Below are positions 18,893 through 52,315 of a stretch of 64,000 bases of DNA, one piece after another. The notes under the pieces were generated by a model. The model did not search any database and was not told the origin of the DNA. It saw nothing but the letters and a program-made list of their open reading frames with translations. Numbering within the stretch: the first letter of the stretch is position 1; the number at the start of each line of letters is the position of its first letter. A program made the position numbers and the translations under genes. The stretch lies in IMG/VR virus record IMGVR_UViG_3300020469_003050, positions 62,001 to 126,000 of that record; one strand, 5' to 3'.

Positions 18893-18902
18893 AAATGAAA
18901 AT

Positions 18903-26605: not shown

Positions 26606-26615
26606 TAACTCAAAT

Positions 26616-34760: not shown

Positions 34761-34761
34761 C

Positions 34762-36189: not shown

Positions 36190-37414
36190 TCATCTCCGTA
36201 TCCTCAAAGTTCTTTTCTCCGTTTCCTCTGAAATCTAATTCTTTTCCACATGTCTTGCCACATATCCATAATCTGTCAGGAGAGTTTATCTCCCAACTAT
36301 CTACTAAATCATTTGAAAAGTATGGTGAGTTTAGTATATCATGAATGCTATGCTTTGACAAGTCATTAAATCCTTCTCCGTATTTTCTATTCATAATAGC
36401 ATTGTCTTCGATACGTCTAGGTGTTGCCATGTCATGTCCTACTTTACTGTAGTAATGTCCTTGCCAACAACAAGGCCAAACTTTACCTTCGTAATCTACA
36501 AATATACTTTTATCTCTCATAGTCTGACAAGCAATGTCTGTAGCTTTTACATAATTATCAAATGTCTTATGTTTCTTAATCACTTTTTCAACGTTGTTTG
36601 TTGTATTTGCATTATCTGTTTTCTCTGGTGCCTTCAATATAGTAGCCATTGCTTTTGCTTTTTCTTCTGTAGTTTTTGCTTTTTTCTTTTCCATGGCTAC
36701 GTGTTGTTTCGCAACAAATTTCAATTCTGTTTTTGTTTCTACTTTTTCTTCTTTGTCGCCTGCATAATGTGTAGGTATTACATAGCGATTAGATTTCTTA
36801 TATCTAAATTTAACAAAGCCCATCTTATCTGCTAATGCTTTGGCTTCTTCAATTTGATGTTCGTTGTGTGCAAATGCAATAAAGTCCCATCTTGCTAGTC
36901 CACCAGCATCTATGAATGCCTGTGCATTTTCCATTATCTTGTTAAAGTTTGTATTCACTCTATATAAATGATTAGTATCCTCTAACCCATCTACTGCGAA
37001 AATAACTTTATCAGGCTTTCTCATTATACTTGCTAACTCTATCCACCACTCTGGTTTATGTACTGAACCATTCGTACTCAGCGTTACTTGTGGAACTCCA
37101 GCGTCTTTGTACATTCTTATAATCTCTAATAGATGAGGATACATAATTGGATCACCAAAGTTACCATTGATAAAAACATGATTAGGTAAGAACGGTTTCA
37201 TTTCTTCTATCATGTTTGTTAACAACTGTGGATCTGTATCAAGTAAATGTACATCATCACGTTTCTTTAATACTACTTCACCACCTTCTACTGCACCATC
37301 CATACCAGTAGTTCTTCCACACATAGGACATAATGCATTACATCGTGAGGTTAACTCTAAGTGTAACACACCTACATCAAATTTTATATATCTTAGTTTC
37401 TCTTGCTTCGCCAT
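36176..37414 (-). CDS. Radical SAM protein with C-terminal SPASM-like domain (class B)
   Basis: CNALCPMC, GNFGDP, YRVN and PCCW...CGKTCG. Confidence 0.9.
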   Translation of the reverse strand: MAKQEKLRYIKFDVGVLHLELTSRCNALCPMCGRTTGMDGAVEGGEVVLKKRDDVHLLDTDPQLLTNMIEEMKPFLPNHVFINGNFGDPIMYPHLLEIIRMYKDAGVPQVTLSTNGSVHKPEWWIELASIMRKPDKVIFAVDGLEDTNHLYRVNTNFNKIMENAQAFIDAGGLARWDFIAFAHNEHQIEEAKALADKMGFVKFRYKKSNRYVIPTHYAGDKEEKVETKTELKFVAKQHVAMEKKKAKTTEEKAKAMATILKAPEKTDNANTTNNVEKVIKKHKTFDNYVKATDIACQTMRDKSIFVDYEGKVWPCCWQGHYYSKVGHDMATPRRIEDNAIMNRKYGEGFNDLSKHSIHDILNSPYFSNDLVDSWEINSPDRLWICGKTCGKELDFRGNGEKNFEDTEMNEYA

Positions 37415-38994
37415 TTTAAAAATAACTCTTCCGGATATCCGTATGCGTGATTAATTTCTTCTAATTTCATTCCTCTAGTTGGTGAACCATCCCAATCTGC
37501 ACTATGCAATCTAAGATGTTTGTTTTTATCGCACATTTTCTTTACTACTTCTTTGTAGATATCTCTACGTTCTTCATATGATAGTAACCACGTAGTATAT
37601 CTTGTTGTAATATAATTACTACTCCATACCACACTATCAAATCCTTCTTCATGTGGTTGAATTCTATCTACAAGAGGCTGATAGTCTCTACATAAATCTG
37701 CTACTCCGTATGTTATATTAGGATTATGTTTAACTTTCTCATGCATTTCATAGAAGTCTTCCATTGTATCAAAGATTCTTAGAATGCTTTTTTGATATGC
37801 CTCTTTTGCTTTTTCTCTTTCACTATCCCAATTAGGTGACATGAAATCAAAGTCTTCATAAATTGATATCAGGGCTTTATCAGTCTTATACCATTCATCG
37901 TGTAAATAATCTAAGTACTGATTAAAGTCTCTCGGATCCCATTCAGTGTGTAACCATTTTCTTGCTTCTAAACTGTTCTCTGATATATCAAAGTAATGTA
38001 GACCTACATTCTCTACATCAGTATTAGGGTTCCAATTATTTAAGAATGCAAATGTTTTAAATCCTGCGGCTACACTGTAAATATTCTTTAGTGGAAACTT
38101 TCTAGGAACAAATATAACATCATTTACTGACTCTGTATTCATAACCCATATGGCATCTGGTGAGCGTTGAACTGTATAGGCTTGATATTGTAAGAAGTCT
38201 TTTTTAGTTTGACCTAGATTACTTTCGTGTGCTTTAAAGTTAGCACAATCTTCTCTAAAGAACTTTTTGAATTCTTCTTGTTCTTCTTTAATCTCTGGAT
38301 ACAAATATGTTTTAGTCTTACGAGCCTGCTCATCAAAGTTTAATACTGATAGTCCTGCTTTTAAACTCTCATTGATTAGATTCCAACCAAAGCCTGTACG
38401 ATTAATTGTTTCTTGTTCTGTTCCCGGTGACAAATACTTAGGCGTATGTCCGTCATGAAAGTTTTCTGTACTTCTCACAGCCTGTCTAACTTCCTGTTGC
38501 TTAACCCCAAAGTCTCCAAACGCAGGTCTTCCCATTGCTTTCCACATAGGATAATTGATAACGAAACATTGCTCATGTAATCTAAACCATCTATCTTTGT
38601 GTTGGTCATCAAGTATATGTCCCATTAATAAAAACTTATTTGCTTTAGCATCTGCTAACCAATCATGATTGCAATACTCTCTGAATAAACTATAACCATG
38701 TTCCAGTGGTTGCCACGTATCATATAATATGTTACCGTATGCTTGAACTACTAAAAGAACAATATCACTTTCTTCTGGATCATTGGCTAAGTCTGCTAGT
38801 ATCTTATCAACTGTATCCTCTTCGTAAATCTTATGTCTATAATGACTGTAATTGTTTCTAAGAAAGTTATAAGTCATCTGTCTAGTGTATTGTGATATTT
38901 CGTCATCACCAATAGTTTTAGATGTATCTAATACTGCACATCTAACTCTCTTGCTAAAATTGGTTGAACGTTGATGGTCTGTGTGTTTAGTCAT
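37393..38994 (-). CDS. Hypothetical protein (533 aa)
   Basis: Long ORF within the operon; no recognised motif. Confidence 0.6.
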   Translation of the reverse strand: MTKHTDHQRSTNFSKRVRCAVLDTSKTIGDDEISQYTRQMTYNFLRNNYSHYRHKIYEEDTVDKILADLANDPEESDIVLLVVQAYGNILYDTWQPLEHGYSLFREYCNHDWLADAKANKFLLMGHILDDQHKDRWFRLHEQCFVINYPMWKAMGRPAFGDFGVKQQEVRQAVRSTENFHDGHTPKYLSPGTEQETINRTGFGWNLINESLKAGLSVLNFDEQARKTKTYLYPEIKEEQEEFKKFFREDCANFKAHESNLGQTKKDFLQYQAYTVQRSPDAIWVMNTESVNDVIFVPRKFPLKNIYSVAAGFKTFAFLNNWNPNTDVENVGLHYFDISENSLEARKWLHTEWDPRDFNQYLDYLHDEWYKTDKALISIYEDFDFMSPNWDSEREKAKEAYQKSILRIFDTMEDFYEMHEKVKHNPNITYGVADLCRDYQPLVDRIQPHEEGFDSVVWSSNYITTRYTTWLLSYEERRDIYKEVVKKMCDKNKHLRLHSADWDGSPTRGMKLEEINHAYGYPEELFLKWRSKRN

Positions 38995-39793
38995 TCACTT
39001 TTTCCCAACTGTCTATCATAATATCTTCATAACTTTTGCCACCATACTGTCCGTGTACAATCATATGAACTCTTACTTCATCTGTATCATTCATCACTGC
39101 ATGTTGATGTCCCACATTCATCTTAATCATACGACCAGGTTTCCACGGAACATATGCATTATCGTCAATCATTTTAAAATAACAATGCTCGGGATTGTTT
39201 AATGATATATTCAATGGTCCTAACTTATTATGTTCATAATCATTATGAGGAGTAATGTATCCGCCTGGTTCTAAGTACATATAACGAACTCTATCGAATG
39301 ACATATAACCTGGAATAGACTTAATCATTTCTACTGTCTTAGGACATTTGTCTGCAATCTCTGTCCAATGATATGCTTCTCTCACTTCTTCTTCGCTTTT
39401 AAAATCAAAACCCATGGCTTTAACATCTTTACTATCCCAATGCTGAGATACATGTTTACCTAAACCATGTAATGTTAAACTACGCCAGCCTCTGTGTCCA
39501 TAATCATCTGGGTTACTTTCATCGTAATCATTTTTTCTATGTTGAATAGCTTCATTATACACTGCCATTGCTTCGCCCCAACATGCTTTCCAATCGAACT
39601 CAGGAACATCTAACTCTAACCAAGGGATGCCTGACTCGTGTGAAATCCATTTAGCTTTTCTGAATCTTGCTGACTCTGGAAACTTAGGCTCATTGAATAT
39701 TGCATCTATAAATGCACTAGGTACAGTATCAAAACTATAACTATTTCTATCTTTAAATACTTCTTCGATTATGTTTGGGTAATTAATTGTCAA
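38987..39793 (-). CDS. Asp/Asn beta-hydroxylase-like 2OG oxygenase
   Basis: LEPGGYITPHND, HAVMN and RVHMIVH. Confidence 0.8.
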   Translation of the reverse strand: MTINYPNIIEEVFKDRNSYSFDTVPSAFIDAIFNEPKFPESARFRKAKWISHESGIPWLELDVPEFDWKACWGEAMAVYNEAIQHRKNDYDESNPDDYGHRGWRSLTLHGLGKHVSQHWDSKDVKAMGFDFKSEEEVREAYHWTEIADKCPKTVEMIKSIPGYMSFDRVRYMYLEPGGYITPHNDYEHNKLGPLNISLNNPEHCYFKMIDDNAYVPWKPGRMIKMNVGHQHAVMNDTDEVRVHMIVHGQYGGKSYEDIMIDSWEKVND

Positions 39794-41330
39794 TGTCTAA
39801 CTCCTGCTGATTAACGTGAAACCCTGAATCTTCTAACTCTTTTAGTAATCTATCATCGAACTCTCCGTCCCAATCTTCACCATCTTCTGGTGTCCAATCT
39901 AAAAGAGGAGCCATCTCAGGAAACACATCTCTAAAATTTGTATCTCTTATACCGTCCATCTTATTGATATACTCAATAAACTCTGGCATACGTTGTCGTG
40001 ACCAGTCACCACTATTCATAAATGAAAGCATACCTCTTAGTCTTTTAATACCGTAGTTTGCATTTTTCCATTCATCATAGTTTGTGACACCATCACATTT
40101 TTCCCAGTTTGCATCAAGCCACTCAATAAACTTGTCATACTTTGCAACTGTCATTTCTTTGAACCACTTAGGTAAAACTTTAACATTTAAATGAGGTGGG
40201 TGATAAACAAAGTGATAGTTAATCATACCTGCACCTAGTGGCCATAAGTTAATCTTTTTAAAATTCTGTTCAATCTTCCACTTAACAAAGTCAGGAAGAT
40301 AATATATGTTAAGAGCCTGAACTGCACAAGCAACTGTAACTTCTACGTTAGGTCCTGTGTTATCTAATAAATGAAATTGTCTTACTGTGTGTTCCCATTC
40401 ACTTGGAAAACGTATGTAATCATTCATAAGACCTATACTGTCTACGCTATAATGGAAACGTACACGCTTGAATTGTTTCCACAAGTCAAATAAACGTTGT
40501 GGCATTTCTAAACCATTTGAGTTATATCTTAATTCAATACCGGGAGCATATCCTCTTTCTACAACTTCTTCAAGTAAAGTATAATGTTCTTCAATGATTG
40601 TAGCTTCCCCACCAGCAAAGTATAACTGTTTCATATGTGGGATTTGGTCATACAACTGATCCCAAAATGCATCATTCTTTTTATGCCAGTTATATGTTGC
40701 ACCATCTATCTGACCTTTGTTACCCCATTGCATAGTTTCTTTTAATGATTCGTTTTCAATCTGTGGATGTAATTTAATCCAATCTTTAACCCACATTGAA
40801 CTGTCATGAGGAGAACACATAATACATTTAAGATTACATTTAGAACCTAAACGCAAGTCTAAGTATCTAATCTTTGGAGGGATTGCACCGTCTTCTGTTG
40901 TCTCATCAAGTATCTCTTTCATATCAACTCTACGAGACCAGTACTCTGTTTCCCAATATCTTTTTGACATATGACCTGCATCTTCCTCTTTGTAACATTT
41001 CATACAACTAGGAGGCATTTCGTTATTAAGCATTTGCTTTCTAACATTCTTCATATAATCATTATTCCAACTTGACATCAAGTCACTATGATTTAAGTTT
41101 GAAGGTTTACCATCAGCATTTTTTAGAACACCTACTTCTCCGCCGTGTTCTTTATCATTTGTAGGACCAACTGAACTTGCATTTGCCGTACAACATACAC
41201 GCATATGTCCATTAGGTCTTGTACTTAAATGAACCCACGGTAACAAACAAAATGTTTTTGTAGGTGCACCTGTTCTTCGAACAAATTCGTTTAAGTTTTT
41301 CTCTAATTCTGGATTGTTTTTCTTGGACAT
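39783..41330 (-). CDS. Radical SAM protein with N-terminal Twitch-like domain (class A)
   Basis: FCLLPW..RVCC..CMKC; CNLKCIMC; AGGEA. Confidence 0.9.
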   Translation of the reverse strand: MSKKNNPELEKNLNEFVRRTGAPTKTFCLLPWVHLSTRPNGHMRVCCTANASSVGPTNDKEHGGEVGVLKNADGKPSNLNHSDLMSSWNNDYMKNVRKQMLNNEMPPSCMKCYKEEDAGHMSKRYWETEYWSRRVDMKEILDETTEDGAIPPKIRYLDLRLGSKCNLKCIMCSPHDSSMWVKDWIKLHPQIENESLKETMQWGNKGQIDGATYNWHKKNDAFWDQLYDQIPHMKQLYFAGGEATIIEEHYTLLEEVVERGYAPGIELRYNSNGLEMPQRLFDLWKQFKRVRFHYSVDSIGLMNDYIRFPSEWEHTVRQFHLLDNTGPNVEVTVACAVQALNIYYLPDFVKWKIEQNFKKINLWPLGAGMINYHFVYHPPHLNVKVLPKWFKEMTVAKYDKFIEWLDANWEKCDGVTNYDEWKNANYGIKRLRGMLSFMNSGDWSRQRMPEFIEYINKMDGIRDTNFRDVFPEMAPLLDWTPEDGEDWDGEFDDRLLKELEDSGFHVNQQELDIDN

Positions 41331-41337
41331 ACTGTAT

Positions 41338-42408
41338 TTATTTCACCTTAATTTTCGTTACTTCTGTGTCCGATACACAACTGCACCAAGTTTGTGGGCA
41401 TATTAATCCATCTGTAGGAAAGTCTATTTCATCTGGTTTGTTTATATGTCCATGAACTAGTTTAGTAAAACAACTGTTACCACTTGTTATAGTTCCATTT
41501 AATTGAACAACTAATGCTTCAATTCCTATCATACACTTCCAGCCTTTCCACGTATTGTGTCCTTGTTCCATAATATGATTTGGGTTATTGAATACTACTG
41601 ATTTGCCTGTCTTAGTATTAAGATAACGCATTTGTTTACCCATACTTTTTCTAAGGAACTTTCTTTTTGCTACAAGATGTACTGCTTCTTTTGAATCACT
41701 TTGTTCTATATCTTGCCAATGCTTTGGTTGTCCATCATATCTACGCAATATTTCAAACGCACCTTCTGGATATACAAACGTATTGTTACTGCCTAATGTT
41801 TCTTGTAATGCTTTTGAATTATGCGTTATACATTTAGAATTCTCATGGTAATACTTTGCCGCTTCAATACATCTATCAAGTAACGGAGGATATATAGCTG
41901 ACTGAATAGAACATATTGTTCCCTTATCCATAAGTATGTTTGATACATCTGTTACATGTTTATAATCTGCACTTTGTGGATGATAACTTATAATAACTTC
42001 ATCAAATATATTTGCATTCTTCTCCCACCAGCGTAGGGTTCTTGAACCATTGGTCAATATTCTCACGCTGGAACTTGAGTCATATTCTTTCATTTTATGA
42101 AATACCTCTGAGAACTTAGGCCATACTGTTGGTTCGCCACCTAATAAGTTCCATAGTATTCTTTTACCTGGTGCATACTTTCTGTAATGGTCTGTTAATC
42201 TTTTTGTAAACTCTAATACTACATCAACTTCTGGCCAAGGAGTTGAACCATCATGAAACTCCTCATCACAATAAGTACAGGCATAATTACAGGTATTACC
42301 CATCATCCAATCAACTACGATATAATCATTACCAACTATAGGTTCGTATCTATCATATTGACTATGATACGAATCATTGGCTTTATATCTTAGTTTTAAT
42401 TCAGCCAT
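41338..42408 (-). CDS. Radical SAM protein (class C)
   Basis: WMMGNTCNYACTYC, GGEPT and WKCMIG...CPQTWCSC. Confidence 0.9.
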   Translation of the reverse strand: MAELKLRYKANDSYHSQYDRYEPIVGNDYIVVDWMMGNTCNYACTYCDEEFHDGSTPWPEVDVVLEFTKRLTDHYRKYAPGKRILWNLLGGEPTVWPKFSEVFHKMKEYDSSSSVRILTNGSRTLRWWEKNANIFDEVIISYHPQSADYKHVTDVSNILMDKGTICSIQSAIYPPLLDRCIEAAKYYHENSKCITHNSKALQETLGSNNTFVYPEGAFEILRRYDGQPKHWQDIEQSDSKEAVHLVAKRKFLRKSMGKQMRYLNTKTGKSVVFNNPNHIMEQGHNTWKGWKCMIGIEALVVQLNGTITSGNSCFTKLVHGHINKPDEIDFPTDGLICPQTWCSCVSDTEVTKIKVK

Positions 42409-43499
42409 TACTTGAACTGCTCCGCAAATGCATCGAACTCTTTACCACATTTCTGTGAACATACCATTGGTTTCCCTGCATGTACATTTGGTTGTTTCCA
42501 ACTATCTACTAATCTATGAGAAAAGTATTCATTGTTTAATACATATTCTATTCCATGTCTCTTAGCATCAAATTCATCTTTACCACCTGACTGTTGTAGA
42601 AGTTCCCATACTTGATTTTCTCCTGGCTTCTGCCACCACTTATACATATTACCAGCTACCCAACAACATGGAAGAATTAATCCTTCTGCACTAATATACA
42701 TATTCTTTTCAGCCGCAACTTTACAACTGATTTGTACATTATCAAAATACTTTTCTAATGAACCATGCTTGTTTGTAATTTCTTTAATCTTATCTAGTGC
42801 TTTATTCTGATACTTAACTTCCTTTGGTTGTTGTAGTAATTGTGTTTCAGCACCTTTTCTATTCTTTGCTTGATGTTCATCTTTCTTAACTTGTTTCATT
42901 GTAGAAAAGAAACGACCTGTCTTTTTAGGTATGAACTTTTTAAAGCCTGTTTTCTCTGCTAATGCTCTAGCCTCTTCTACTTGATGTTCATTGTGTTCAA
43001 AGATTAAGTAATCCCAATGTGCTTTACCACCTGCCTCAATAAACGCTACCGCATTTTCCCACGCTATATCCCAATTAACATTCTGTCTATATAAATGATT
43101 TGTATCTTTCAGTCCATCAAATCCAAACTTAACATAACTCCAGTTACCTAATGTCTTTGCTAATTCTCTCCACCACTCTGGTTTCTTCGCACCAGCGTTG
43201 GTATTCATTCCCAGCGTTAACTCCCGTTTCTGTGAACGAAAGTATTGCATGACTTCTAATGTATCTTTAGCAACAATAGGATCACCAAAGTTACCACACA
43301 TATAAATTCTTTCTAACTGCTTTACAAACTCTGGAGGCATCATCTCCTGAATATCTTGTAATGATAATTCATGCATACCAAGATTAGGATTATCTTTACC
43401 ACCATGTACGTTTCTATCGCACATAGGACAAGCGGCTTGACACTTTTCAGTTATTTCCAAGTGTATTGCTCTTACTTCATCATATTTGTAAATCATCAT
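42408..43499 (-). CDS. Radical SAM protein with C-terminal SPASM-like domain (class B)
   Basis: CQAACPMC, GNFGDP and PCCW...CSQKCG. Confidence 0.9.
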   Translation of the reverse strand: MMIYKYDEVRAIHLEITEKCQAACPMCDRNVHGGKDNPNLGMHELSLQDIQEMMPPEFVKQLERIYMCGNFGDPIVAKDTLEVMQYFRSQKRELTLGMNTNAGAKKPEWWRELAKTLGNWSYVKFGFDGLKDTNHLYRQNVNWDIAWENAVAFIEAGGKAHWDYLIFEHNEHQVEEARALAEKTGFKKFIPKKTGRFFSTMKQVKKDEHQAKNRKGAETQLLQQPKEVKYQNKALDKIKEITNKHGSLEKYFDNVQISCKVAAEKNMYISAEGLILPCCWVAGNMYKWWQKPGENQVWELLQQSGGKDEFDAKRHGIEYVLNNEYFSHRLVDSWKQPNVHAGKPMVCSQKCGKEFDAFAEQFK

Positions 43500-44775
43500 A
43501 GTCCTTTTTTATGATTTCATATATTTCTGGTATGTAATCTTTTATGTGTTGATTTCTTACTTTATCAAATCTCTTTGTTGCTCTTGCTAGATGTATAGGA
43601 TTATATTGTTCCTTGTCATTCAACATTTGATATAATGCAGGAATAACTCTATATGAATATCTGTTCTCCCATGGTTCAATCTCTTTTATTAACGAATAAA
43701 TGTATGGAGTACGAATATCTACTGGGATATTTCTTATTGAAGACCACTCTGGTGTTCTAAGAATCTCTGGTCTCATAGTTATACCTATACTTTGTGCCCA
43801 CTTAATCGTATCAAGCAAATTAAATAAATTATATGCTTGCCATGTAAAACTTATTTCACTTACCGCATGTGGATGTTTTTGTGCTATTTCATGATATAAT
43901 CTAATTGTTTTGTCTATCGTTTTAAATTTAACTGGTGTTCTGATATATTCAACTACTGATTCAGTTCCATCAATACTATAATTGAATGATACGTTATTAA
44001 ACTTTGCTAATTTATCAACAAATCTTCTATTATTATTTGTACAGTTTGTAGTAAAATGTAATGGAACATTAAGATATTTCTTATCAATTAATATATCTAA
44101 GAACTTATCAACTTCTGGCATAATAGTGGGTTCTCCGCCTAAGAACTTAATTCTATTTCCTTTGTCTGCCGCTTCTAATAAAAATTCTATATTATGCTCA
44201 TTTGCTAAAACATCTGACCTTATTATCTTTCCATGACCTAAAATAGGACGTAATAATTCTTGATTATCTTGTACTTCTTTTTCTATTTGTGAACTTGATA
44301 TAGGTCCGCACATTCTACATTTTAAATTACATAAGTTGCCTGGTCTAACGTCAATATCTATTGGTGCATTCCATTGATTACCTGTTTCTATATTTGGTTC
44401 AATCTTTGTACTGTACATAGTATTGAAATTAATTCTATCACTTCTACCACCTGCACTTTCTAAGTTATAACATTTAACACAAACATCTGGTTGTTCATTA
44501 CGCAAGAATTTCTTTCTGAACTCTTTGTAATAATCATTACTCCAACGTTTCTTTAAATCTAATTCAGTATCATCTTCTACTACATTGTACTCGGTTGACA
44601 TACAACAAACTCTTTGCCCTTCATTACTGTGAACATACATATGTGCAAATGGTGCCGCACAAAAGTTACTTGTATCGGCTTTGCCATTTTGGTGTTCCTT
44701 CAACAATTCTTTAAAAGCCTCTCTTGCTTTTATTTTCTCTTTGTCTATATAACCTCTGACTTGAGCATTTTTCAC
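43480..44775 (-). CDS. Radical SAM protein with N-terminal Twitch-like domain (class A)
   Basis: FCAAPF..RVCC..CVKC; CNLKCRMC; GGEPT. Confidence 0.9.
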   Translation of the reverse strand: MKNAQVRGYIDKEKIKAREAFKELLKEHQNGKADTSNFCAAPFAHMYVHSNEGQRVCCMSTEYNVVEDDTELDLKKRWSNDYYKEFRKKFLRNEQPDVCVKCYNLESAGGRSDRINFNTMYSTKIEPNIETGNQWNAPIDIDVRPGNLCNLKCRMCGPISSSQIEKEVQDNQELLRPILGHGKIIRSDVLANEHNIEFLLEAADKGNRIKFLGGEPTIMPEVDKFLDILIDKKYLNVPLHFTTNCTNNNRRFVDKLAKFNNVSFNYSIDGTESVVEYIRTPVKFKTIDKTIRLYHEIAQKHPHAVSEISFTWQAYNLFNLLDTIKWAQSIGITMRPEILRTPEWSSIRNIPVDIRTPYIYSLIKEIEPWENRYSYRVIPALYQMLNDKEQYNPIHLARATKRFDKVRNQHIKDYIPEIYEIIKKDYDDLQI

Positions 44776-46188
44776 TTATTTCTCTCCGATAATCATATAC
44801 CGGTTGTAATGCTCCAATTCTAGTGTCCCAGTGAATATATTTTTAGATAGTTTCAACTCTTTAGCCCAACTATCAACATCTGTTTTAGTATTAACAACTG
44901 TTTCATCTTCATGTTCAATAAAATCATTATTCTGTAATATCACTAGTGTACCCTTTGGAATAGCATTCCACCATTTGTCAAACTCTGCAATATGTTCGCA
45001 ACTTGTATTGATTACACATGTTGGATGACCAATAGTATGTGTTGTATCCATGACTTCGAACTTAACTGCATCACTGTATTTATAATGTTTTATTGGCAGT
45101 GTTTCCTCAGAAAACTTCAATTCTGCTATATCTTTTACGAATGATTTGAACTTCATATTGTCAATTATATACTCTTTATTGAGTGTATCTGCTGGATTAT
45201 CTGTAGTAGGATCACTATCAAAGCTATAGATATTACCTTCAATCTTGCATCTTTCAAACAATAATGCTGGTAAAACTCCATACCAACCTGCACAAGTGTA
45301 AATAGTTTTACCTAAGTTTATATCATAATTATTCACAATGTCAATTAACCACAGTTTAGACTGTAACTGTCCTCTACTAAATGCATCAGTCAACGCTTGA
45401 CCTTCAAATCTTTTAGTCATTTTCTTCATATTCATAGGAATACTATACTTGCCTTCAGTAAGAGTGTGAACTAATTCAAATACTTTTGTTTTAAATATTG
45501 TTGCACTTTTTACGTTAGCAATATCTTCATTAGATTCATCAAAACCCTGAATAACTTTAAATAATAAATATAAGTCTGGATCAGTATCAACTGCAATAAT
45601 ATTTTTTAATGCACTTAATATTTCATCATCAGGGTATTCAATATTCATTATTACTCTGAATAATAATTCTGTTTGTGATTTAATAAAATTATGATTACCA
45701 CAAACATTTTTTAATGCACCTAATCCTTCTTCATCATCTATTATTTTTTCTAGTACATTAAATAATAAAAATACTAAGTCTCTATCAAACTCACCACCTT
45801 CCGCACAAATAGTATTTTTTAAATCATCTAATGTATCTGCATTGTCTGGATACATTCCATTCAAAACTCTAAACACAAGATACATTGATTTTCTATCAAT
45901 AGTTTCACATGCCATAAAGTTTCTTAATGCGTCCAATGAATCATCGTTTTGAGATATTTTGTCTAACACTTTAAACAGGACGAATGTGTTATCACAAACT
46001 TGTCTCTCATAAACGAGATTCATTAGAGCATTCATATTCGCTCTATGTTTCTTACCTAAGAAGTAAGAGCATAAAGTAAATATACTACTGAGTTCCTCAG
46101 TATTAACAACTCTTTCTAATTCAGATAGCATAGGTCTACTATTCCCATAAAGGAGATTTAATCTATCTGCAATTTCATACGGCTTCAT
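44776..46188 (-). CDS. Helical-repeat protein fused to SAM-dependent methyltransferase-like domain
   Basis: About 6 LFxV...L.ALKN repeats; DAFSRGQLQSKLWL, CAGWYG, SFDSD and INTSCEH. Confidence 0.6.
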   Translation of the reverse strand: MKPYEIADRLNLLYGNSRPMLSELERVVNTEELSSIFTLCSYFLGKKHRANMNALMNLVYERQVCDNTFVLFKVLDKISQNDDSLDALRNFMACETIDRKSMYLVFRVLNGMYPDNADTLDDLKNTICAEGGEFDRDLVFLLFNVLEKIIDDEEGLGALKNVCGNHNFIKSQTELLFRVIMNIEYPDDEILSALKNIIAVDTDPDLYLLFKVIQGFDESNEDIANVKSATIFKTKVFELVHTLTEGKYSIPMNMKKMTKRFEGQALTDAFSRGQLQSKLWLIDIVNNYDINLGKTIYTCAGWYGVLPALLFERCKIEGNIYSFDSDPTTDNPADTLNKEYIIDNMKFKSFVKDIAELKFSEETLPIKHYKYSDAVKFEVMDTTHTIGHPTCVINTSCEHIAEFDKWWNAIPKGTLVILQNNDFIEHEDETVVNTKTDVDSWAKELKLSKNIFTGTLELEHYNRYMIIGEK

Positions 46189-47132
46189 TACTTAAGCCCC
46201 ATTTTCAAAAAGAATTGTTTCGATCCAACTGTAATCACTCCACTGTACTGTTCGTATGACATTGGAAATCTTAAGTTGAAATTTTGTGAACTAGGAAAAG
46301 GTCTAGGGACATCTCCTGTTTCGCCAACTAATACCACTCTTTTAGTGTCTGGTATCATATCATACCAATCCTGGAAATTGGTTAGATAACTTACACTGCA
46401 ATTAATGATAGTACCTGGGATCTCATTGTATGGAGTAGATAATTTTCCATCAGCTAAACGTGTTTGAAACTCATTTTCTATATAATTAACCTCAAACAAA
46501 TCTTGCGTATTTGATTTAAATTTCCAATCCTGCAATAATTCTTTTTTGTGAAATTCATCTGCTAAGAACTGACACGTACCATTAATATCGAATGAACGAA
46601 TATTCTCAAATCGCATCTTAGTATCTAAGAGCATAGAACCTAATAATCCCATACCCCCTCCTAATAGATAAACAACACCAATATATTTCTGACCATATAC
46701 GTAAATCATTTGTTGTACAATCCAACTATACAGTTTTGCATTATCTTTATTTGCAAATGTACTCATATCTACGTTAGGATAGTTATATATTATTTCTTTA
46801 AATCTATCGACAATAGTATCATTGTCTGTTAAATTAACGTGTGCTAAGAATTCCATTGCACATCGATAATTATGTAATTGCTGACTTACGTTCTCTAAAG
46901 AATATTCAACTGCCATTTTCTGATAGTCGTATTCTTTTACAAGTAAGTCACGCCTTCTTTTAGTCTTTCTGTTAGGCTTTTCTGTTATTTCAATAGTTTC
47001 ATTTTTAGGAATATCAGGTAATTCTTCTGAACTTATATCTACTGACGGATCTTTACTGTCGTAAAGGTCATCTGACTTTGTAATTTTACTTTTGTCAAAC
47101 CTAGCCTTTCTTCTTTCTTTTATATTACTCAT
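46188..47132 (-). CDS. Methyltransferase-like paralog
   Basis: LGGGMG, RSFDIN and INCSVSY, aligning by eye with the neighbour's C-terminal domain. Confidence 0.5.
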   Translation of the reverse strand: MSNIKERRKARFDKSKITKSDDLYDSKDPSVDISSEELPDIPKNETIEITEKPNRKTKRRRDLLVKEYDYQKMAVEYSLENVSQQLHNYRCAMEFLAHVNLTDNDTIVDRFKEIIYNYPNVDMSTFANKDNAKLYSWIVQQMIYVYGQKYIGVVYLLGGGMGLLGSMLLDTKMRFENIRSFDINGTCQFLADEFHKKELLQDWKFKSNTQDLFEVNYIENEFQTRLADGKLSTPYNEIPGTIINCSVSYLTNFQDWYDMIPDTKRVVLVGETGDVPRPFPSSQNFNLRFPMSYEQYSGVITVGSKQFFLKMGLK

Positions 47133-49902
47133 TGTTAAAGTCCTGTTTAAATTGAGAATTTAACCAATCATAGTCATTGATTAATCCTAGTTTTTCTGGG
47201 TTGTCTGCGTTCTCACTACCAAACTTTCTGCCAGCGTTTGCTCCTGCAACTGAATACTTACCATACTTTGCATTATCATCAGATACAGTACACCAAGTAT
47301 CTAATCGTTCTTTATCCTCATCTGCTTTGAGATTATGAATAATACCTGAACTCAACTTAGTACACTCTCTGAAAGCAGACTTCCAGGTGTCGTATGGGTT
47401 AGTATTAAATGCGGTGTAGTTAGCAACTACAGGCATAGGTTTAAACTTTTCTGAAATTGATGTAGTAAAGTCAATGTTCCAATCTTTCGCATCACGTAAT
47501 AATTGTGTTGGAAATAATTTAAGTCCACCGAAACCATATATTAATCCATTGATAGGATTTTTAGACTTCCAAACATGAACTGCATCTTCGTCCCACACTG
47601 TAGGAAAGTATTCGAACTTAAATTCATCTAATAATATTGCATCTGCATCAAGTACATAAAACATTTTCGTATCTGCAACTTCGGCCGCACGTTTATGAGC
47701 ATTAAAGATACCTTTAACTCCGTGAACTCGTTTTGCATTTGGTACACGTGAAAGTAATTTAGCATAGTTTTCTTCTGCTTCTTTTTCACGATAGGAAAGA
47801 AACACTACATCAAAGGGTATATCGGCTGATGATGGCGTCTTCGATTTGACTGGCTTTTTATTCTTAAAATTCATCTTACGAATTTTATCATCATCCGGCT
47901 TCAATTCTTTTAGAGCGGCAGTGGGTATAAGGCTCAGTCCACCATATTGATGAACGTAACCAGTGTAGGGATTAGACTTAGGCCATACATGAAAATGTGA
48001 TTTATGGTGTCTGTCTACATAGAATGTTCTACTGAAATCTTCTGTTAATTCTACATCATTATTGATAGCCCAAAAATAACCTGACTTGGTCATCTTCGTT
48101 GCTCTCATATATGCTTTTGCAAGACCTTTACTTGCATCAATTACATCGATATTCTCATGGTCGTTAAAGTACTTGGCATGTTCTTTATACATACCTTCAT
48201 CGAAATAAAATGCAGGATGTCCTACAACTCTACTCGCAACTTCATCAACTCTGATAATATTTTTAAATCTATCGAATGAGAAGTCTTGCTCAGTTAGTTT
48301 AAACTTATCTAAGTGAGGTCTATGAACTAAATATACTCCAGCCTCTTTGCCTTCTTCACTTTTAAATGCAAATACATTTTCGATAGAAAAGATATCGGGA
48401 TAGTAATCAAATTGAAAATCATCTAACAACTCTACCGCGGTATCTATTACCCAATAAAACACTCTACCCTTTGACTGCTTATATGCTTTGAAAGGATCAC
48501 GTGTAAAATACTTTTTAATATTATGTTTATCTGGTATTCTCATACCATAACTATCATGCAGATTTACATTATCTGGATGATAATCTTTATTACTGAATGC
48601 TAATCCACCATGACCTAAATCTTTACCTGTTCTTGCACGTTGTCTCCATATATGTGTTGGACCCAAGTTATATAAATCAGGATAAAAATCATCAATCATT
48701 GGATTAATTAATTTTAAATCTGGATTGACCATCCAGAAAGTATATTCTTTTGCAAGTTTAACTGCTTCTTCAACTGTTCTTGCTTCAACTATTTCTATTT
48801 CTTTTAATCTACCTACAATTAAATCAATATCTTTTTGTTGTTCTTCATCAGGTTTATGAGGAACAAGTCGTACACCGTTACGCACAGGCATACCAGTTGA
48901 TGTATTAACTTTAAAATTATGAATTTTATCTCTATCGTAAATAAATGGATAGAAATTAATATCAAATTCTTCTACATCATCATGAATTAACCAATACATA
49001 TCTGTATCAACTTCGTGACTTAAATCATGCATGTCTTTTGTTCTAATTACAGGAAACTCTAAATCTTTACACATAGCATCTTTTTCATAGACTGCTTTCT
49101 TTTTAAAGTTAAATATTTCGTAATCTTTTTCTTTAAACATAGGACCTTCTTTAGGAAATAATCCTAGTCCATGATATTCACGTGTTAAATTAGTTATTGG
49201 ATTTTGTTTCTGCCATACAACTACTTTTTGTTTCTCTTTATCTAAGCCAAACGCAAAAGAATAATCAAATTCGAATTTATTAAATATTTCTGTATTAGGA
49301 TGAATTAAATAATAAAAATCAGTACGAGTCATTTCTCTGCACTTAGTATGCACATCAACATTATTATCGCCAGTAACTGTTTTTATTTCAGGAAAGCGTT
49401 GTTTTAATCTTTTTAAATTAACTTTACCGTAGTCTTTTTCCCAATAAAATATTTCATATGTTTCTGTTGTTGGTTTATATTTTACGAATTGTTTGGTATC
49501 ATGCTCTTTGAACTCTCCAGTCAAATAATAAGCATCTTTGATATGTTCTTCTGATTGTTTTAATACTTCGCTAGTCTTAAATAATTTGACACCAACAACT
49601 GAACGCCATGAATTTCTTTCATCAGCATTCCAGACATGAGTTATATTTTCATCCCATTCATTGGTCTGAAAGTCATAATCAAAATGTGGATTGACTTCGA
49701 CATCTGGATCAATAACCCAGAAGTGTTTAGTATTAGCAACGGTACCAATTTTCTTGATTGCTGACGTTAACTTAGGGTCATTCCAATCTTCTAAATTGAT
49801 TTTAACCATACGAAAATTAGGGTACTTTTCTTTTATTCTATCGTACCTTTCGTTGGTCTCTCTATCGTTCTTATATGTTAGAAAAAATCCATCGTAAGCC
49901 AT
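47125..49902 (-). CDS. Multi-repeat GT-A glycosyltransferase-like protein
   Basis: Seven ~120-aa repeats; the last has GVKGIFNAH..FYVLDAD (DxD). Confidence 0.65.
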   Translation of the reverse strand: MAYDGFFLTYKNDRETNERYDRIKEKYPNFRMVKINLEDWNDPKLTSAIKKIGTVANTKHFWVIDPDVEVNPHFDYDFQTNEWDENITHVWNADERNSWRSVVGVKLFKTSEVLKQSEEHIKDAYYLTGEFKEHDTKQFVKYKPTTETYEIFYWEKDYGKVNLKRLKQRFPEIKTVTGDNNVDVHTKCREMTRTDFYYLIHPNTEIFNKFEFDYSFAFGLDKEKQKVVVWQKQNPITNLTREYHGLGLFPKEGPMFKEKDYEIFNFKKKAVYEKDAMCKDLEFPVIRTKDMHDLSHEVDTDMYWLIHDDVEEFDINFYPFIYDRDKIHNFKVNTSTGMPVRNGVRLVPHKPDEEQQKDIDLIVGRLKEIEIVEARTVEEAVKLAKEYTFWMVNPDLKLINPMIDDFYPDLYNLGPTHIWRQRARTGKDLGHGGLAFSNKDYHPDNVNLHDSYGMRIPDKHNIKKYFTRDPFKAYKQSKGRVFYWVIDTAVELLDDFQFDYYPDIFSIENVFAFKSEEGKEAGVYLVHRPHLDKFKLTEQDFSFDRFKNIIRVDEVASRVVGHPAFYFDEGMYKEHAKYFNDHENIDVIDASKGLAKAYMRATKMTKSGYFWAINNDVELTEDFSRTFYVDRHHKSHFHVWPKSNPYTGYVHQYGGLSLIPTAALKELKPDDDKIRKMNFKNKKPVKSKTPSSADIPFDVVFLSYREKEAEENYAKLLSRVPNAKRVHGVKGIFNAHKRAAEVADTKMFYVLDADAILLDEFKFEYFPTVWDEDAVHVWKSKNPINGLIYGFGGLKLFPTQLLRDAKDWNIDFTTSISEKFKPMPVVANYTAFNTNPYDTWKSAFRECTKLSSGIIHNLKADEDKERLDTWCTVSDDNAKYGKYSVAGANAGRKFGSENADNPEKLGLINDYDWLNSQFKQDFNNE

Positions 49903-49928: not shown

Positions 49929-49957
49929 ATTATAGCAGATTACGTCTTGCTTGTAAA
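49929..49957 (-). promoter_or_regulatory. Minus-strand sigma70 promoter
   Basis: Reverse complement reads TTTACA-N17-TATAAT with TG extension, upstream of the 925-aa gene. Confidence 0.6.
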
Positions 49958-51505
49958 GACCAAAGTTTTGTAATAATTCGCAAAATCCCTAGCATCTTGC
50001 TCGTTATTGACTATTGGCATACCTTTGATATTCAGTGAAGTATTCAGTAACATAGGACAACCTGTTTTATCATAAAAACGTGTTAATAATTCATGTAGAC
50101 CTGCATGTTGTTCTTTGTTAACTGTTTGGACACGTGAAGTTCCATCTTTATGAATAATTGCTGGAAAATCTTTTGGGTGCTTACACTTAGCTATGAACTG
50201 CATATAAGGACCTGAAGGACCATCGAAATAATCATTCACGTATTCTTCTAATATCATAGGCGCAAACGGTCTGAACTGTTGTCTGCGTTTTATTTCATTT
50301 ACAGTATCTTTTATGTCATTCCCTCTAGGATCTGCACATAAACTACGATTACCTAATGCACGTGGACCGAACTCTGCACGACCTGATGCTATACCACAAA
50401 TAGACCCTTGAAGTAAAGCATTAAGTACATCTTCGACAGGATACTCTCCAGGTATGTCATGTCCAAGATATGGGCTTTTCCATTGAATTCTTTCACGTGA
50501 ATATTTCTGAGCAACACCGATACAACTACCAGCATCGCCAGGATTAGGCATAATCCATACTGACTTGAAATAATCTTTTATCATACTATTCGCACTACAA
50601 TTTAAAGCACAACCACCCATCAGAACTAAATTCTCTGAGTGACACATTGCTTTAGATTTAATTAATATTTCGGATAGTATCATTTCATACACATGTTGCG
50701 TTGCGGCGGCTAAGTCGAATAAGTCTTGTTCCTCTTTTAATTCAGGTAAGAACCATCGACAACCACGATGCAAATTCTGTGTAAATTTAATTAGGGTATT
50801 CTTTTGCATAGTATATCCAACTAATCCAGACTCATGAATAATACCGAACTCATCATATATATGTTGAATTAATTCTTTACCTTCATATAATCTGTGTGGA
50901 TCACCATAAGCGGCCATACCCATTAAAATATATTCATCTTCGTTAGGCTTTAATCCAAGACGTTGAGTCATTGCTGAATAAAATAAACCTATTGAACTTG
51001 GATAACTCTGAGAATATACTTTCTCTAATCTCATTCCATGTCCCTTCCAGAACGTAAGTGTTTCGAATTCTCCTATTGAATCGATAACAACTATCGTAGC
51101 TTCATCATACGGCGAAGTAAAGTAACCACTTGCGGCATGAGTATAATGATGCTTTTGATATTTAATTGGAATATGTTTTAATTGTGGAAACTTTTCTAAG
51201 TATTGACTCGGTAATTCAGACGTATCTAAACTTAATTTCCATTGACCTGCACGTAATTGACGTAATTTTTTAAGCATTGGTTTCTCATACCAAGCAATTA
51301 AATCAGGCTTACCCCCATAATGAATAGCATCTGTTAATAGAGCCTCATTTAAATCAGGGTCATTTTTCTTTTTAGAATAACGTTCCGCATGCCCGGCGAA
51401 TTTAATCTCGCCTTCATCAATAATAGCTACTGCGGCGTCATGATTTATGGCACCACTAATACCCATTATTACGGGTTCACGCCTATTTATAAATGAACGG
51501 ATCAC
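49940..51505 (-). CDS. Carbamoyltransferase (NodU/CmcH family)
   Basis: HDAA, HAERY, HHYTHA, EFGPRALGNRS, RPFAP and LNTSLN. Confidence 0.93.
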   Translation of the reverse strand: MIRSFINRREPVIMGISGAINHDAAVAIIDEGEIKFAGHAERYSKKKNDPDLNEALLTDAIHYGGKPDLIAWYEKPMLKKLRQLRAGQWKLSLDTSELPSQYLEKFPQLKHIPIKYQKHHYTHAASGYFTSPYDEATIVVIDSIGEFETLTFWKGHGMRLEKVYSQSYPSSIGLFYSAMTQRLGLKPNEDEYILMGMAAYGDPHRLYEGKELIQHIYDEFGIIHESGLVGYTMQKNTLIKFTQNLHRGCRWFLPELKEEQDLFDLAAATQHVYEMILSEILIKSKAMCHSENLVLMGGCALNCSANSMIKDYFKSVWIMPNPGDAGSCIGVAQKYSRERIQWKSPYLGHDIPGEYPVEDVLNALLQGSICGIASGRAEFGPRALGNRSLCADPRGNDIKDTVNEIKRRQQFRPFAPMILEEYVNDYFDGPSGPYMQFIAKCKHPKDFPAIIHKDGTSRVQTVNKEQHAGLHELLTRFYDKTGCPMLLNTSLNIKGMPIVNNEQDARDFANYYKTLVFTSKT

Positions 51506-51599
51506 GCTTCTTTAATTCCTCTAATCTCTTTTTCATTTCTCTACGTCTTTTAAACTCTGTCCAAGGATAAAGAATTATATCAATTATCTTTCTAATCAT
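51483..51599 (-). CDS. 38-aa peptide ending PFIYK (not in ORF track)
   Basis: MIRKIIDIILYPWTEFKRRREMKKRLEELKKRDPFIYK; ATGA-coupled to the upstream gene, AAAGGA RBS. Confidence 0.65.
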   Translation of the reverse strand: MIRKIIDIILYPWTEFKRRREMKKRLEELKKRDPFIYK

Positions 51600-52315
51600 G
51601 ATTTATTTCCTTTAATATCCACATGTAATATCTCTGCCCATTCGGCATGAGCCTCTTCATCTGGATGCATATATCGTTCATCTCCTTCTACAGGAAAGAA
51701 CTTTTTATTTTCATACATATAAGTAAAAAACGTTTGGTCTTCATATATTTTACTCATATCTAATTGTTTATAAACTGAAACCATATCACTTTGCTCACAT
51801 AACTCAGTAAACTTAGTTGGCTCTAATAAATTAGGTGTTAAATTAAGTGAATTAAATATTATATAAGGTATCTTATTAGCAGTAAAGAAATTCTGGAGTG
51901 TCATTAAATGAATTAAATAACAATGAAAATCATATACTGGTGACCAGAAATGCTTCATATACAACTGATTAAATAAATCTAAATCACGGTTGTTTTGCTC
52001 ATCTAAATTAATATTCCCATGATATTCATGCGATGGAATATTATGAACTAATAAATTCTTTTTCTCAATAAAATGCTCTCTACGATTAGGAGCGGTCATA
52101 CCAATAGCAACGAAATCAACTGTTTCTTTATTAACTAATTTATCGCTTATAGTAGTAATAGTATTACGAACAATATAATTATTCGATACCCCACGCTGAG
52201 CCTCAGTCTCTACTCCATCAATATTCATTTTATCAGCTAGAATAAAAGGCCATGCTCGGTCTTTATGGGCTAGACCAGTTCCATAAGTGAAACTGCATCC
52301 GTTTGCATATAACAT
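51596..52315 (-). CDS. SGNH/GDSL-like hydrolase or acyltransferase
   Basis: NGCSFTYG, GVSN and HPDEEAH. Confidence 0.7.
   Translation of the reverse strand: MLYANGCSFTYGTGLAHKDRAWPFILADKMNIDGVETEAQRGVSNNYIVRNTITTISDKLVNKETVDFVAIGMTAPNRREHFIEKKNLLVHNIPSHEYHGNINLDEQNNRDLDLFNQLYMKHFWSPVYDFHCYLIHLMTLQNFFTANKIPYIIFNSLNLTPNLLEPTKFTELCEQSDMVSVYKQLDMSKIYEDQTFFTYMYENKKFFPVEGDERYMHPDEEAHAEWAEILHVDIKGNKS

What the first reader, a model, noticed from the sequence alone, without database searches (positions are those of the whole stretch)
47125..49902. 925-aa protein built from seven degenerate GT-A-like repeats
Seen: a recurring aromatic core: FWVIDPD, YYLIHPN, YWLIHDD, FWMVNPD, YWVIDTA, FWAINND and FYVLDAD, each followed by an F..(F/Y)-rich stretch and usually an H/V-x-W/F motif. 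Only repeats 1 and 7 keep a DxD. It has its own promoter. Inference: a processive glycan polymerase or scaffold with inactive repeats acting as ruler or binding modules.
Basis: partly seen in the sequence, partly recalled or inferred. Interest (0 to 1): 0.6.

Follow-up and report, generated by a model that had tools for sequence, protein, structure and literature searches.

The report
Phage glycosyltransferase with six pseudo-domains
A marine jumbo phage encodes a 925-residue soluble protein made of seven copies of one sugar-transferase (GT-A) domain, of which only the last keeps all its conserved residues; the other six are conserved inactive-looking copies whose number ranges from 0 to 13 among relatives, an arrangement I found described nowhere.

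Summary
All seven motifs are present: 7 observed against 0.06 expected, and none of 20,000 shuffles reached 7. They mark seven homologous modules, and a profile built from stand-alone relatives hits all seven.

The last module is predicted to be a GT-A fold (Z 11.5 to B4GALNT1, Z 10.6 to STIV A197). In the full model, R1, R2 and R6 also match GT-A structures. R3-R5 are truncated.

In 121 homologs, only the C-terminal module keeps 13-17 of 17 family-invariant residues (17 in most). It is also the only module with an invariant D811 and R845-E846-x-x-K849 cap. R1-R6 keep 3-9 of 17, yet dN/dS is 0.04-0.23.

Repeat number ranges from 1 to 14, largely through gain or loss of an R2-R3-R4 block. One-domain forms occupy the same slot in a conserved phage gene island: NodU-like carbamoyltransferase, DUF6071, a methyltransferase-like protein and many N-twitch radical-SAM enzymes. 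Cellular one-domain members lie among GT2, GT4 and GT-C genes.

Best reading: one active glycosyltransferase carrying a variable arm of pseudo-GT-A domains. A processive polymerase is not supported. Acceptor, donor and the role of the arm are unknown.

The parts
47125..49902 (-). Whole ORF, 925 aa plus stop (P0001): seven GT-A-derived modules and a helical cap. Soluble, with no transmembrane segment.
49468..49902 (-). R1 (aa 1-145): full-size pseudo-GT-A module. It keeps D65-x-D67 and 9 of 17 family-invariant residues and is constant across architectures.
   Evidence: In the full model, 1-143 matches beta-1,4-galactosyltransferase 8xc8 at Z 9.4. dN/dS 0.077.
49060..49467 (-). R2 (aa 146-281): full-size pseudo-module with H-x-N in place of DxD and 6 of 17 invariants. 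First unit of the expandable R2-R3-R4 block.
   Evidence: 146-283 matches CgT 5hea at Z 7.7. dN/dS 0.083.
48802..49059 (-). R3 (aa 282-367): truncated pseudo-module lacking beta1-alpha1, with H-D-D and 3 of 17 invariants.
   Evidence: dN/dS 0.225
48535..48801 (-). R4 (aa 368-456): truncated pseudo-module with N-x-D and 5 of 17 invariants.
   Evidence: dN/dS 0.165
48223..48534 (-). R5 (aa 457-560): truncated pseudo-module with D-x-A and 3 of 17 invariants.
   Evidence: dN/dS 0.04
47818..48222 (-). R6 (aa 561-695): full-size pseudo-module with N614-x-D616 (D-x-D in most orthologs) and 8 of 17 invariants. It carries the only Pfam hit, a sub-threshold Glycos_transf_2 match.
   Evidence: 559-696 matches PmHS2 8viw at Z 7.4. 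dN/dS 0.095.
47398..47817 (-). R7 (aa 696-835): intact GT-A core with 17 of 17 invariants (S703 Y704 E706 G731 A735 H736 T745 D752 D754 F761 W778 N782 Y789 G790 G792 G793 K795) plus D811. Proposed catalytic module.
   Evidence: dN/dS 0.013
47128..47397 (-). Helical C-terminal cap (aa 836-925) carrying the invariant R845-E846-x-x-K849. Found only after the last module. E846 is a candidate catalytic base (inference).
49929..49957 (-). Sigma-70-like promoter match, TTTACA-17-TGcTATAAT, overlapping the 3' end of the carbamoyltransferase gene.
49940..51505 (-). NodU/NolO-type carbamoyltransferase. It lies directly upstream of the family gene in many loci.
51596..52315 (-). DUF6071 protein, syntenic with the carbamoyltransferase.
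46188..47132 (-). 314-aa protein with no family match ('u314'). Its start overlaps the stop of the repeat gene by 8 nt. Conserved downstream in the closer loci.
44776..46188 (-). 470-aa protein ('u470'), the neighbour most constantly linked to the family. Its C-terminal 200 aa are class-I-methyltransferase-like (a lead only) and homologous to the domain fused to the GT paralog at L002.
33597..44775 (-). Rest of the island: seven radical-SAM enzymes (several of the NF033640 N-terminal-twitch type), an Asp/Arg-hydroxylase-type oxygenase and a 533-aa unknown protein.

Best explanation
The gene encodes a soluble cytoplasmic enzyme with one working active site. The last module (aa 696-835, GT-A fold with DxD) together with its helical cap (aa 836-925, R-E-x-x-K) most likely transfers a sugar or similar group from a nucleotide-activated donor to an acceptor. 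Six GT-A-derived pseudo-domains precede it. They have lost most of the residues that are invariant in the family, and R3-R5 have also lost the first beta-alpha unit of the nucleotide-binding half. Selection nevertheless keeps them as folded modules. They form a non-catalytic arm whose length changes in evolution, mainly by gain or loss of an R2-R3-R4 block between constant ends (R1 and R6-R7). The protein belongs to a conserved phage biosynthetic island (carbamoyltransferase, DUF6071, methyltransferase-like u470, many radical-SAM enzymes, 2OG-type hydroxylases). In other phages the same slot holds a one-domain version. Shown here: repeat homology, predicted fold, residue-conservation pattern, selection, repeat-number variation and synteny. 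Inferred: that R7 is catalytically active, that the donor is an NDP-sugar, that the sugar is then carbamoylated by the adjacent enzyme, and that the arm binds or spaces the acceptor or partner enzymes.
For: All seven modules match a profile of stand-alone relatives. The R7 model has pLDDT 89.6, and its residues 2-142 align with GT-A enzymes: B4GALNT1 at Z 11.5 (139 residues, rmsd 2.8), STIV A197 at Z 10.6 and SpsA at Z 9.5; Foldseek gives WrtF, SunS and RmlT at E 4e-5 to 2e-4. The full model (pLDDT 80.9) matches tandem GT-A proteins (K4CP, LH3, COLGALT1, Mimivirus R699, PmHS2), and R1, R2 and R6 each match GT-A chains. In 121 homologs, the C-terminal module of the apparently full-length proteins keeps 13-17 of the 17 invariants (17 in most), while other modules keep 0-13. 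D811 and R845-E846-K849 are invariant and exist only in the last unit. dN/dS against a 93%-identical ortholog is 0.013 for R7 and 0.04-0.23 for R1-R6. Repeat counts run 5-14 among long homologs and 1-13 in IMG/VR loci. The block grammar is R1[R2R3R4]n R5R6R7. Synteny with the carbamoyltransferase, DUF6071, u470 and radical-SAM genes holds across one-, two-, seven-, twelve- and thirteen-repeat forms. A paralog in the same genome fuses the GT domain to a u470-like domain (E 3e-18). One-domain members in a Streptomyces genome and a Bacteriovoracaceae chromosome lie among GT4, GT2, GT-C (PMT_2) and FkbM methyltransferase genes. The protein has no transmembrane segment.
Against: There is no biochemical evidence for any activity. 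Pfam Glycos_transf_2 is below threshold (21.1 against 23.3 bits) and falls on R6, not R7. No solved structure is a sequence relative. Nucleotidyltransferases of the same fold score almost as high as glycosyltransferases (Z 9.7-10.3), so the fold alone does not fix the chemistry. R1 keeps an almost invariant DxD, and the penultimate repeat keeps one in most orthologs, so further nucleotide- or metal-binding sites, or even activities, are not excluded. I could not inspect the model's coordinates, so the shape of the arm is unknown. Truncated R3-R5 rest on sequence homology and the model's secondary structure only.
Confidence: 0.65

Rival explanations
1. Multi-site enzyme or polymerase: R1, the penultimate repeat and R7 are all active transferases that together build an oligo- or polysaccharide, as the two GT-A domains of K4CP or PmHS2 do.
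For: R1 keeps DxD in nearly all orthologs, and the penultimate repeat keeps it in most. The best Foldseek matches of the full model are two-domain polymerases K4CP and PmHS2. R1 and R6 are full-size GT-A-like modules in the model.
Against: R1 and R6 keep only 8-9 of 17 invariants, lack H736 and have no R-E-x-x-K cap. In this phage R6 reads N-x-D. One-domain forms sit in the same island slot. The protein has no QxxRW motif and no membrane segment.
Confidence: 0.12
2. The family is not a glycosyltransferase but another enzyme of the same fold, such as a nucleotidyltransferase making an activated sugar, or a phospho-sugar or polyol-phosphate transferase.
For: MobA, IspD, HddC and Aq1419 score Z 9.2-10.3, close to the best glycosyltransferase. 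There is no Pfam glycosyltransferase assignment for R7.
Against: There is no G-x-G-x-R loop. An hhhhDxD strand motif is typical of GT-A transferases (established knowledge of the fold). The top structural hits are glycosyltransferases. Cellular members sit among GT2, GT4 and GT-C genes.
Confidence: 0.1
3. The whole protein is non-enzymatic: a structural, virion or host-interaction protein built from a recycled enzyme fold, with repeat number tuned like that of a fibre.
For: Rapid repeat-number change (1-14) is typical of phage structural and host-interaction proteins (general knowledge).
Against: The last module keeps every invariant of a family that also exists as 225-240-aa stand-alone proteins in bacteria. 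dN/dS of R7 is 0.013. The gene lies in an enzyme island, not among structural genes.
Confidence: 0.05
4. The repeats are themselves the substrate: a multi-copy scaffold modified by the neighbouring radical-SAM, hydroxylase and methyltransferase-like enzymes, by analogy with multi-core peptide precursors fused to an enzyme.
For: The gene is tightly linked to many radical-SAM/SPASM-type enzymes and Asp/Arg-hydroxylase-type oxygenases, which often act on peptides. Copy number is variable.
Against: The repeats are predicted to be folded 90-140-aa alpha/beta domains with pLDDT mostly 80-90, not short linear cores. Islands with a one-domain form carry as many radical-SAM genes.
Confidence: 0.03

Closest known systems
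GLT25D1/COLGALT1 and LH3/PLOD3 (collagen glycosyltransferases with a non-catalytic GT-A domain)
   Same: A non-catalytic GT-A lobe precedes a catalytic GT-A lobe in one chain. In GLT25D1 the N-lobe still binds UDP-galactose while the C-lobe is catalytic (PMC12987934 abstract). Both proteins are among the Foldseek matches of the full model. R1 here likewise keeps a DxD.
   Different: Those enzymes have one accessory domain, whereas this protein has six and its relatives 0-13, three of them truncated. No sequence relationship was shown. The acceptor here is unknown.
Two-domain GT-A polymerases (E. coli K4CP chondroitin polymerase, Pasteurella PmHS2)
   Same: Tandem GT-A domains in one soluble or peripheral chain. 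They are the best Foldseek matches of the full model (E 3e-6), and R6-R7 aligns with K4CP at Z 7.7.
   Different: In the polymerases both domains are active, each with its own DxD and acceptor site. Here only the last module keeps the family's conserved set.
Small viral GT-A glycosyltransferases (STIV A197, PBCV-1 A64R domain 1)
   Same: A minimal GT-A core of about 190-200 residues with DxD, encoded by a virus: Z 10.6 and 8.1-9.3.
   Different: They are single domains with no pseudo-domain array and show no detectable sequence similarity.
Pfam Glycos_transf_2 (PF00535) / CAZy GT2
   Same: Same fold class and the same position of the DxD strand. There is a weak profile match around the DxD of R6.
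   Different: The score is below the gathering threshold, and R7 has no hit at all. The family has its own invariant set (G..AH, YG.GG.K, RE..K) and no Pfam model.

Membership tests
GT-A fold nucleotide-diphospho-sugar transferase superfamily | Rossmann-like alpha/beta/alpha core with a central mixed sheet | tested here: met
   R7 model: Z 11.5, 10.6 and 9.5 to B4GALNT1, A197 and SpsA over about 135-139 residues. R1, R2 and R6 in the full model: Z 9.4, 7.7 and 7.4. These are predicted structures only. R3-R5 are truncated and have no separate match.
GT-A fold nucleotide-diphospho-sugar transferase superfamily | DxD metal and nucleotide-sugar binding motif at the end of the hydrophobic strand | tested here: met
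   D752-A-D754 in R7 is invariant in 47 of 47 family members. It is also present in R1 and absent from R2-R6 of this protein.
GT-A fold nucleotide-diphospho-sugar transferase superfamily | Transfer of a glycosyl group from an NDP-sugar | not testable with these tools
   This needs an enzyme assay. Context among GT2, GT4 and GT-C genes in cellular genomes is supportive only.
Pfam PF00535 Glycos_transf_2 | Profile score at or above the gathering threshold (23.3 bits) | tested here: not met
   21.1 bits for the whole protein, with the best stretch in R6. R7 alone gives no hit at E up to 1.
Membrane-embedded processive GT2 synthases (BcsA, hyaluronan or chitin synthase type) | Transmembrane channel and QxxRW motif | tested here: not met
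   Maximum 19-residue hydropathy is 0.92 and there is no QxxRW. Structural matches to BcsA and HAS are weak (Z 8.7-9.3, rmsd above 5 A).
Dual-active-site GT-A polymerases (K4CP or PmHS2 type) | Two or more modules, each with a complete catalytic residue set | tested here: not met
   Only the last module keeps 17 of 17 invariants and the RE..K cap. The others keep 3-9 of 17 in this protein.
Sugar nucleotidyltransferases of the same fold (IspD, MobA, RmlA type) | Glycine-rich G-x-G-(T/S)-R loop after strand 1 | tested here: not met
   No GxGxR anywhere in the protein. After strand 1 the family has S-Y-x-E instead.
Uncharacterised phage/Bdellovibrionia/Streptomyces family defined here (alignment A2) | Seventeen invariant residues of the core plus D811 and R845-E846-x-x-K849 in the cap | tested here: met
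   R7 plus cap keeps all of them. Relatives number 734 (one-domain search) and 231 (long forms), at least 594 IMG/VR loci and 49 loci in cellular-genome assemblies.

The most novel reading that the evidence does not exclude
The variable arm of pseudo-glycosyltransferase domains is a functional device in its own right. It would act as a modular ruler or multivalent docking scaffold between a nucleotide-binding N-terminal module (R1) and the catalytic C-terminal module. On this reading it either sets the spacing or reach of glycosylation on a polymeric acceptor (a virion or host-envelope component), or organises the radical-SAM-rich island's enzymes into an assembly line. Phages would tune its length by adding or removing R2-R3-R4 blocks. 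I know of no other expandable array of pseudoenzyme domains.
Probability: 0.25. Interest if true: 0.75.

Novelty: new variant of a known kind. Interest (0 to 1): 0.6.

Why it matters
Glycosyltransferases with one dead accessory GT-A domain are known (GLT25D1, LH3). I found no described case of five to thirteen pseudo-GT-A modules in tandem that are kept by selection and vary in number between close relatives. The family has no Pfam model or name, yet it is common: at least 594 IMG/VR loci, and this gene is near-identical in marine metagenomes of ten or more studies. It is also a core gene of a large uncharacterised radical-SAM island in marine jumbo phages, which occurs in Bdellovibrionia too. 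Finding its acceptor would open that island to study. It would also give a tractable system for asking what pseudoenzyme domains do and how repeat number is selected.

Tried and rejected
- Self-BLASTP of the protein found no internal repeats at E up to 10. The repeats were seen only with shuffle-calibrated local alignment and profiles.
- PHROGs, NCBIfam and Pfam gave no family above threshold for the protein.
- PDB sequence searches with the domain and with its profile gave nothing meaningful.
- The phage collection gave only one annotated hit, Ralstonia phage RsoM2USA, where the gene and all its neighbours are 'hypothetical protein'.
- Literature searches for the island, for DUF6071 and for tandem inactive GT-A domains in phages found no description of this family. 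A pelagimyophage paper only mentions radical-SAM cassettes in hypervariable regions.
- I tested whether repeat number tracks the number of radical-SAM genes. It does not: one-domain islands carry as many.
- The 314-aa downstream protein is not homologous to the genes downstream of the cellular family members. The Bacteriovoracaceae 314-aa neighbour is instead a second family paralog.
- dN/dS against the 78% ortholog L014 was discarded because indels put segments out of register and dS is saturated.
- Joints in the read-laying table have short sides in metagenome contigs, so I did not take them as repeat-number polymorphism.
- I did not run the large representative search or a complex prediction. 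No claim here rests on absence of relatives or on a specific protein-protein contact.
Full report
**Where it is.** The interval 47125-49902 is closed on the plus strand and open on the minus strand, giving a 925-aa protein, P0001. The window is bases 62001-126000 of a 342,607-bp virus record with direct terminal repeats, that is, a complete jumbo phage genome of about 35% G+C. The gene lies in a run of minus-strand genes from about 31.5 to 53.2 kb, where GC skew is inverted relative to the flanks.

**Promoter.** A near-consensus promoter, TTTACA-17-TGcTATAAT, lies 27 nt before the start codon. Its hexamers are conserved in orthologs whose spacer has diverged. The next gene overlaps the stop codon by 8 nt, so the gene is also part of an operon-like array.

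**Fold.**
- With a 47-sequence alignment, the last module plus tail (aa 691-925) folds with pLDDT 89.6.
- Residues 2-142 of that model align with GT-A enzymes: B4GALNT1 at Z 11.5 (139 residues, rmsd 2.8), STIV A197 at Z 10.6, a Leptospira glycosyltransferase at Z 10.1 and SpsA at Z 9.5. Foldseek gives WrtF, SunS and RmlT.
- Nucleotidyltransferases of the same fold score nearly as high, at Z 9.7-10.3.
- The remaining 90 residues form a helical cap with no clear match.
- The full-length model (33 orthologs, pLDDT 80.9, pTM 0.51) gives each module a beta-alpha-beta-alpha-beta pattern, except R3-R5, which lack the first beta-alpha unit.
- In that model, R1 (1-143) matches a beta-1,4-galactosyltransferase at Z 9.4, R2 (146-283) matches CgT at Z 7.7, and R6 (559-696) matches PmHS2 at Z 7.4.
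- Two-module stretches match tandem GT-A proteins: CHSY3-CHPF, K4CP and Mimivirus R699. Foldseek adds LH3 and COLGALT1.
R3-R5 are truncated derivatives, supported by sequence homology and the model's secondary structure only.

**Which modules can work?**
- The one-domain family has 14 invariant and 20 near-invariant positions. I followed 17 of them: S703 Y704 E706 G731 A735 H736 T745 D752 D754 F761 W778 N782 Y789 G790 G792 G793 K795.
- Across 121 long homologs, the C-terminal module of the apparently full-length proteins keeps 13-17 of these, and 17 in most. All other modules keep 0-13.
- The first and penultimate modules are the best preserved, at 8-12 of 17, usually with DxD. The middle modules keep 0-8.
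- In P0001 the counts are 9, 6, 3, 5, 3, 8 and 17.
- D811 and R845-E846-x-x-K849 are invariant wherever the alignment covers them, and R-E-x-x-K occurs only once in the protein.
- E846 lies about 94 residues after the DxD, where inverting GT2 enzymes carry their catalytic base. That role for E846 is my inference.
- The protein has no QxxRW, no G-x-G-x-R loop and no membrane segment.

**Are the degenerate modules decaying?** No. Against an ortholog of 92.8% nucleotide identity and equal length, dN/dS is as follows:

| Segment | dN/dS |
|---|---|
| R1 | 0.077 |
| R2 | 0.083 |
| R3 | 0.225 |
| R4 | 0.165 |
| R5 | 0.040 |
| R6 | 0.095 |
| R7 | 0.013 |
| Cap | 0.113 |

Mean identity across 33 seven-repeat orthologs is 57-72% for R1-R6 and 86% for R7.

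**Repeat-number variation.**
- Homologs of 515-1536 aa carry 5 to 14 modules.
- Among the best 80 of at least 594 IMG/VR loci, the family ORF has 1, 2, 3, 4, 5, 6, 7, 8 or 13 modules.
- Within the close clade the grammar is regular:
  - 5 modules = R1 R2 R3 R6 R7
  - 7 modules = R1 to R7
  - 10 modules = R1 [R2 R3 R4]x2 R5 R6 R7
  - 13 modules = R1 [R2 R3 R4]x3 R5 R6 R7
- The ends are constant and the middle expands by a block of about 297 aa.
- A distant 12-module clade (29% identity) has units that resemble each other more than they resemble specific units of P0001, which suggests independent expansion.

**Context.**
- Directly upstream lie a NodU/NolO-type carbamoyltransferase, a DUF6071 protein and a cupin.
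- Downstream lie a 314-aa and a 470-aa protein without families, and then seven radical-SAM enzymes. Several of these are of the N-terminal-twitch type, NF033640.
- The run also holds two Asp/Arg-hydroxylase-type oxygenases, an aminotransferase and RpiB.
- The same order is found around a 12-module homolog of 29% identity and around 13-module and other 7-module forms. It is also found around 369-aa (two modules by the repeat profile) and 232-aa (one-domain) forms, which sit in exactly the same slot.
- The most constant neighbours are the u470 homolog and the radical-SAM genes.
- u470 looks like a class-I methyltransferase, on a language-model lead only.
- Its C-terminal 200 residues are homologous to the domain fused behind a GT paralog elsewhere in this genome (L002, E 3e-18). 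This fusion argues that the two work together.
- A third paralog lies at L003.

**Cellular relatives.**
- One-domain members occur in Streptomyces, Saccharopolyspora, Dyadobacter and Bdellovibrionia.
- In Streptomyces filamentosus the gene lies between a GT4-type and a GT2-type glycosyltransferase and an FkbM methyltransferase.
- In a Bacteriovoracaceae chromosome two paralogs and a u470 homolog lie next to three GT2 genes and a PMT_2 (GT-C) gene.
- This is the best indirect evidence that the family acts in glycan or glycoconjugate assembly.
- Multi-module forms were seen only on phage-like contigs or small MAG contigs.

**Occurrence.** The gene is near-identical in marine, seawater and viral metagenomes of ten or more studies. 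Short identical contigs occur in two RNA libraries, which is compatible with expression but does not prove it.

**Interpretation.** The evidence fits one catalytic GT-A module with an N-terminal arm of six pseudo-GT-A domains. The closest known design is GLT25D1, whose non-catalytic N-lobe binds UDP-galactose and whose C-lobe is catalytic (PMC12987934); LH3 is similar. Here the accessory part is multiplied and variable. A processive or multi-site polymerase is unlikely, but it is not excluded for R1 and the penultimate module, which keep DxD. Donor, acceptor and the arm's role remain unknown. The constant ends and the expandable middle make a spacer or docking function the most attractive idea, and it is untested. 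Adjacency to a NodU-type O-carbamoyltransferase suggests a sugar that is subsequently carbamoylated, as in Nod factors and several antibiotics (established knowledge of that family). For this locus that remains an inference.

**Limits.**
- All folds are predictions.
- I could not read model coordinates or PAE.
- Repeat counts depend on a profile threshold (domain E up to 0.01).
- The word search sees only 0.55-1.75 times the query length, so forms longer than about 1,620 aa may exist.

Noticed in passing
window 33597-44775 (minus strand): Seven radical-SAM genes lie in one run, several with the SPASM/twitch domain at the N-terminus (NF033640, scores 295-437 bits). They are interleaved with Asp/Arg-hydroxylase-type oxygenases and a 533-aa unknown protein. 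The cassette recurs in many phage contigs and in Bdellovibrionia. Its product is unknown.
   Followed up: partly
window 4363-27935 (plus strand): This is a metabolic region unusual for a phage. It holds a xanthine/uracil permease (4363-5655), SAM synthetase MetK (10223-11371), an SbmA/BacA-type transporter (15006-15980) and a DegP-like trypsin-PDZ protease (16787-18058). It also holds a MoxR-type AAA ATPase (18879-20030) with a DUF2201 VWA/metallopeptidase (26592-27935), an AMP-binding enzyme (20103-21467), a tryptophan-halogenase-type flavoenzyme (21470-23146), a fatty-acid desaturase (24642-25418) and a beta-ketoacyl synthase (25402-26550). MetK would feed the radical-SAM enzymes. The remaining genes look like natural-product chemistry.
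   Followed up: no
L002 1504-3117 (G000:C1 about 334.7 kb): A paralog of 537 aa has an intact GT-A domain plus cap fused to a C-terminal domain homologous to the 470-aa neighbour of the repeat gene (E 3e-18). This is a gene-fusion link between the two families.
   Followed up: partly
L003 1255-2235 (G000:C1 about 147 kb): A third paralog (326 aa, DGD motif) represents the roughly 300-aa subfamily. In many other phage loci that subfamily sits just upstream of the repeat-bearing gene. Here it lies elsewhere in the genome.
   Followed up: no
window 30702-32040: A thymidylate-synthase-family gene (plus strand, E 2e-101) and an RpiB-type sugar-phosphate isomerase (minus strand) flank the strand switch at the end of the island.
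   Followed up: no
L014 (ENA long-read contig, 335,506 bp): In this 78%-identical relative the carbamoyltransferase and the downstream genes are split into many short ORFs while the repeat gene is intact. This is most likely uncorrected long-read frameshift error rather than real gene decay.
   Followed up: no
P0092 (1536 aa): A distant 14-module homolog has a strict two-unit alternation at the DxD position (W-D / P-D) and a precomputed PF12974 hit. It appears to be a separately evolved, more regular array.
   Followed up: no
L103 (MAG contig): Two repeat-bearing family genes lie side by side (12 and 6 modules) directly after a carbamoyltransferase.
   Followed up: no
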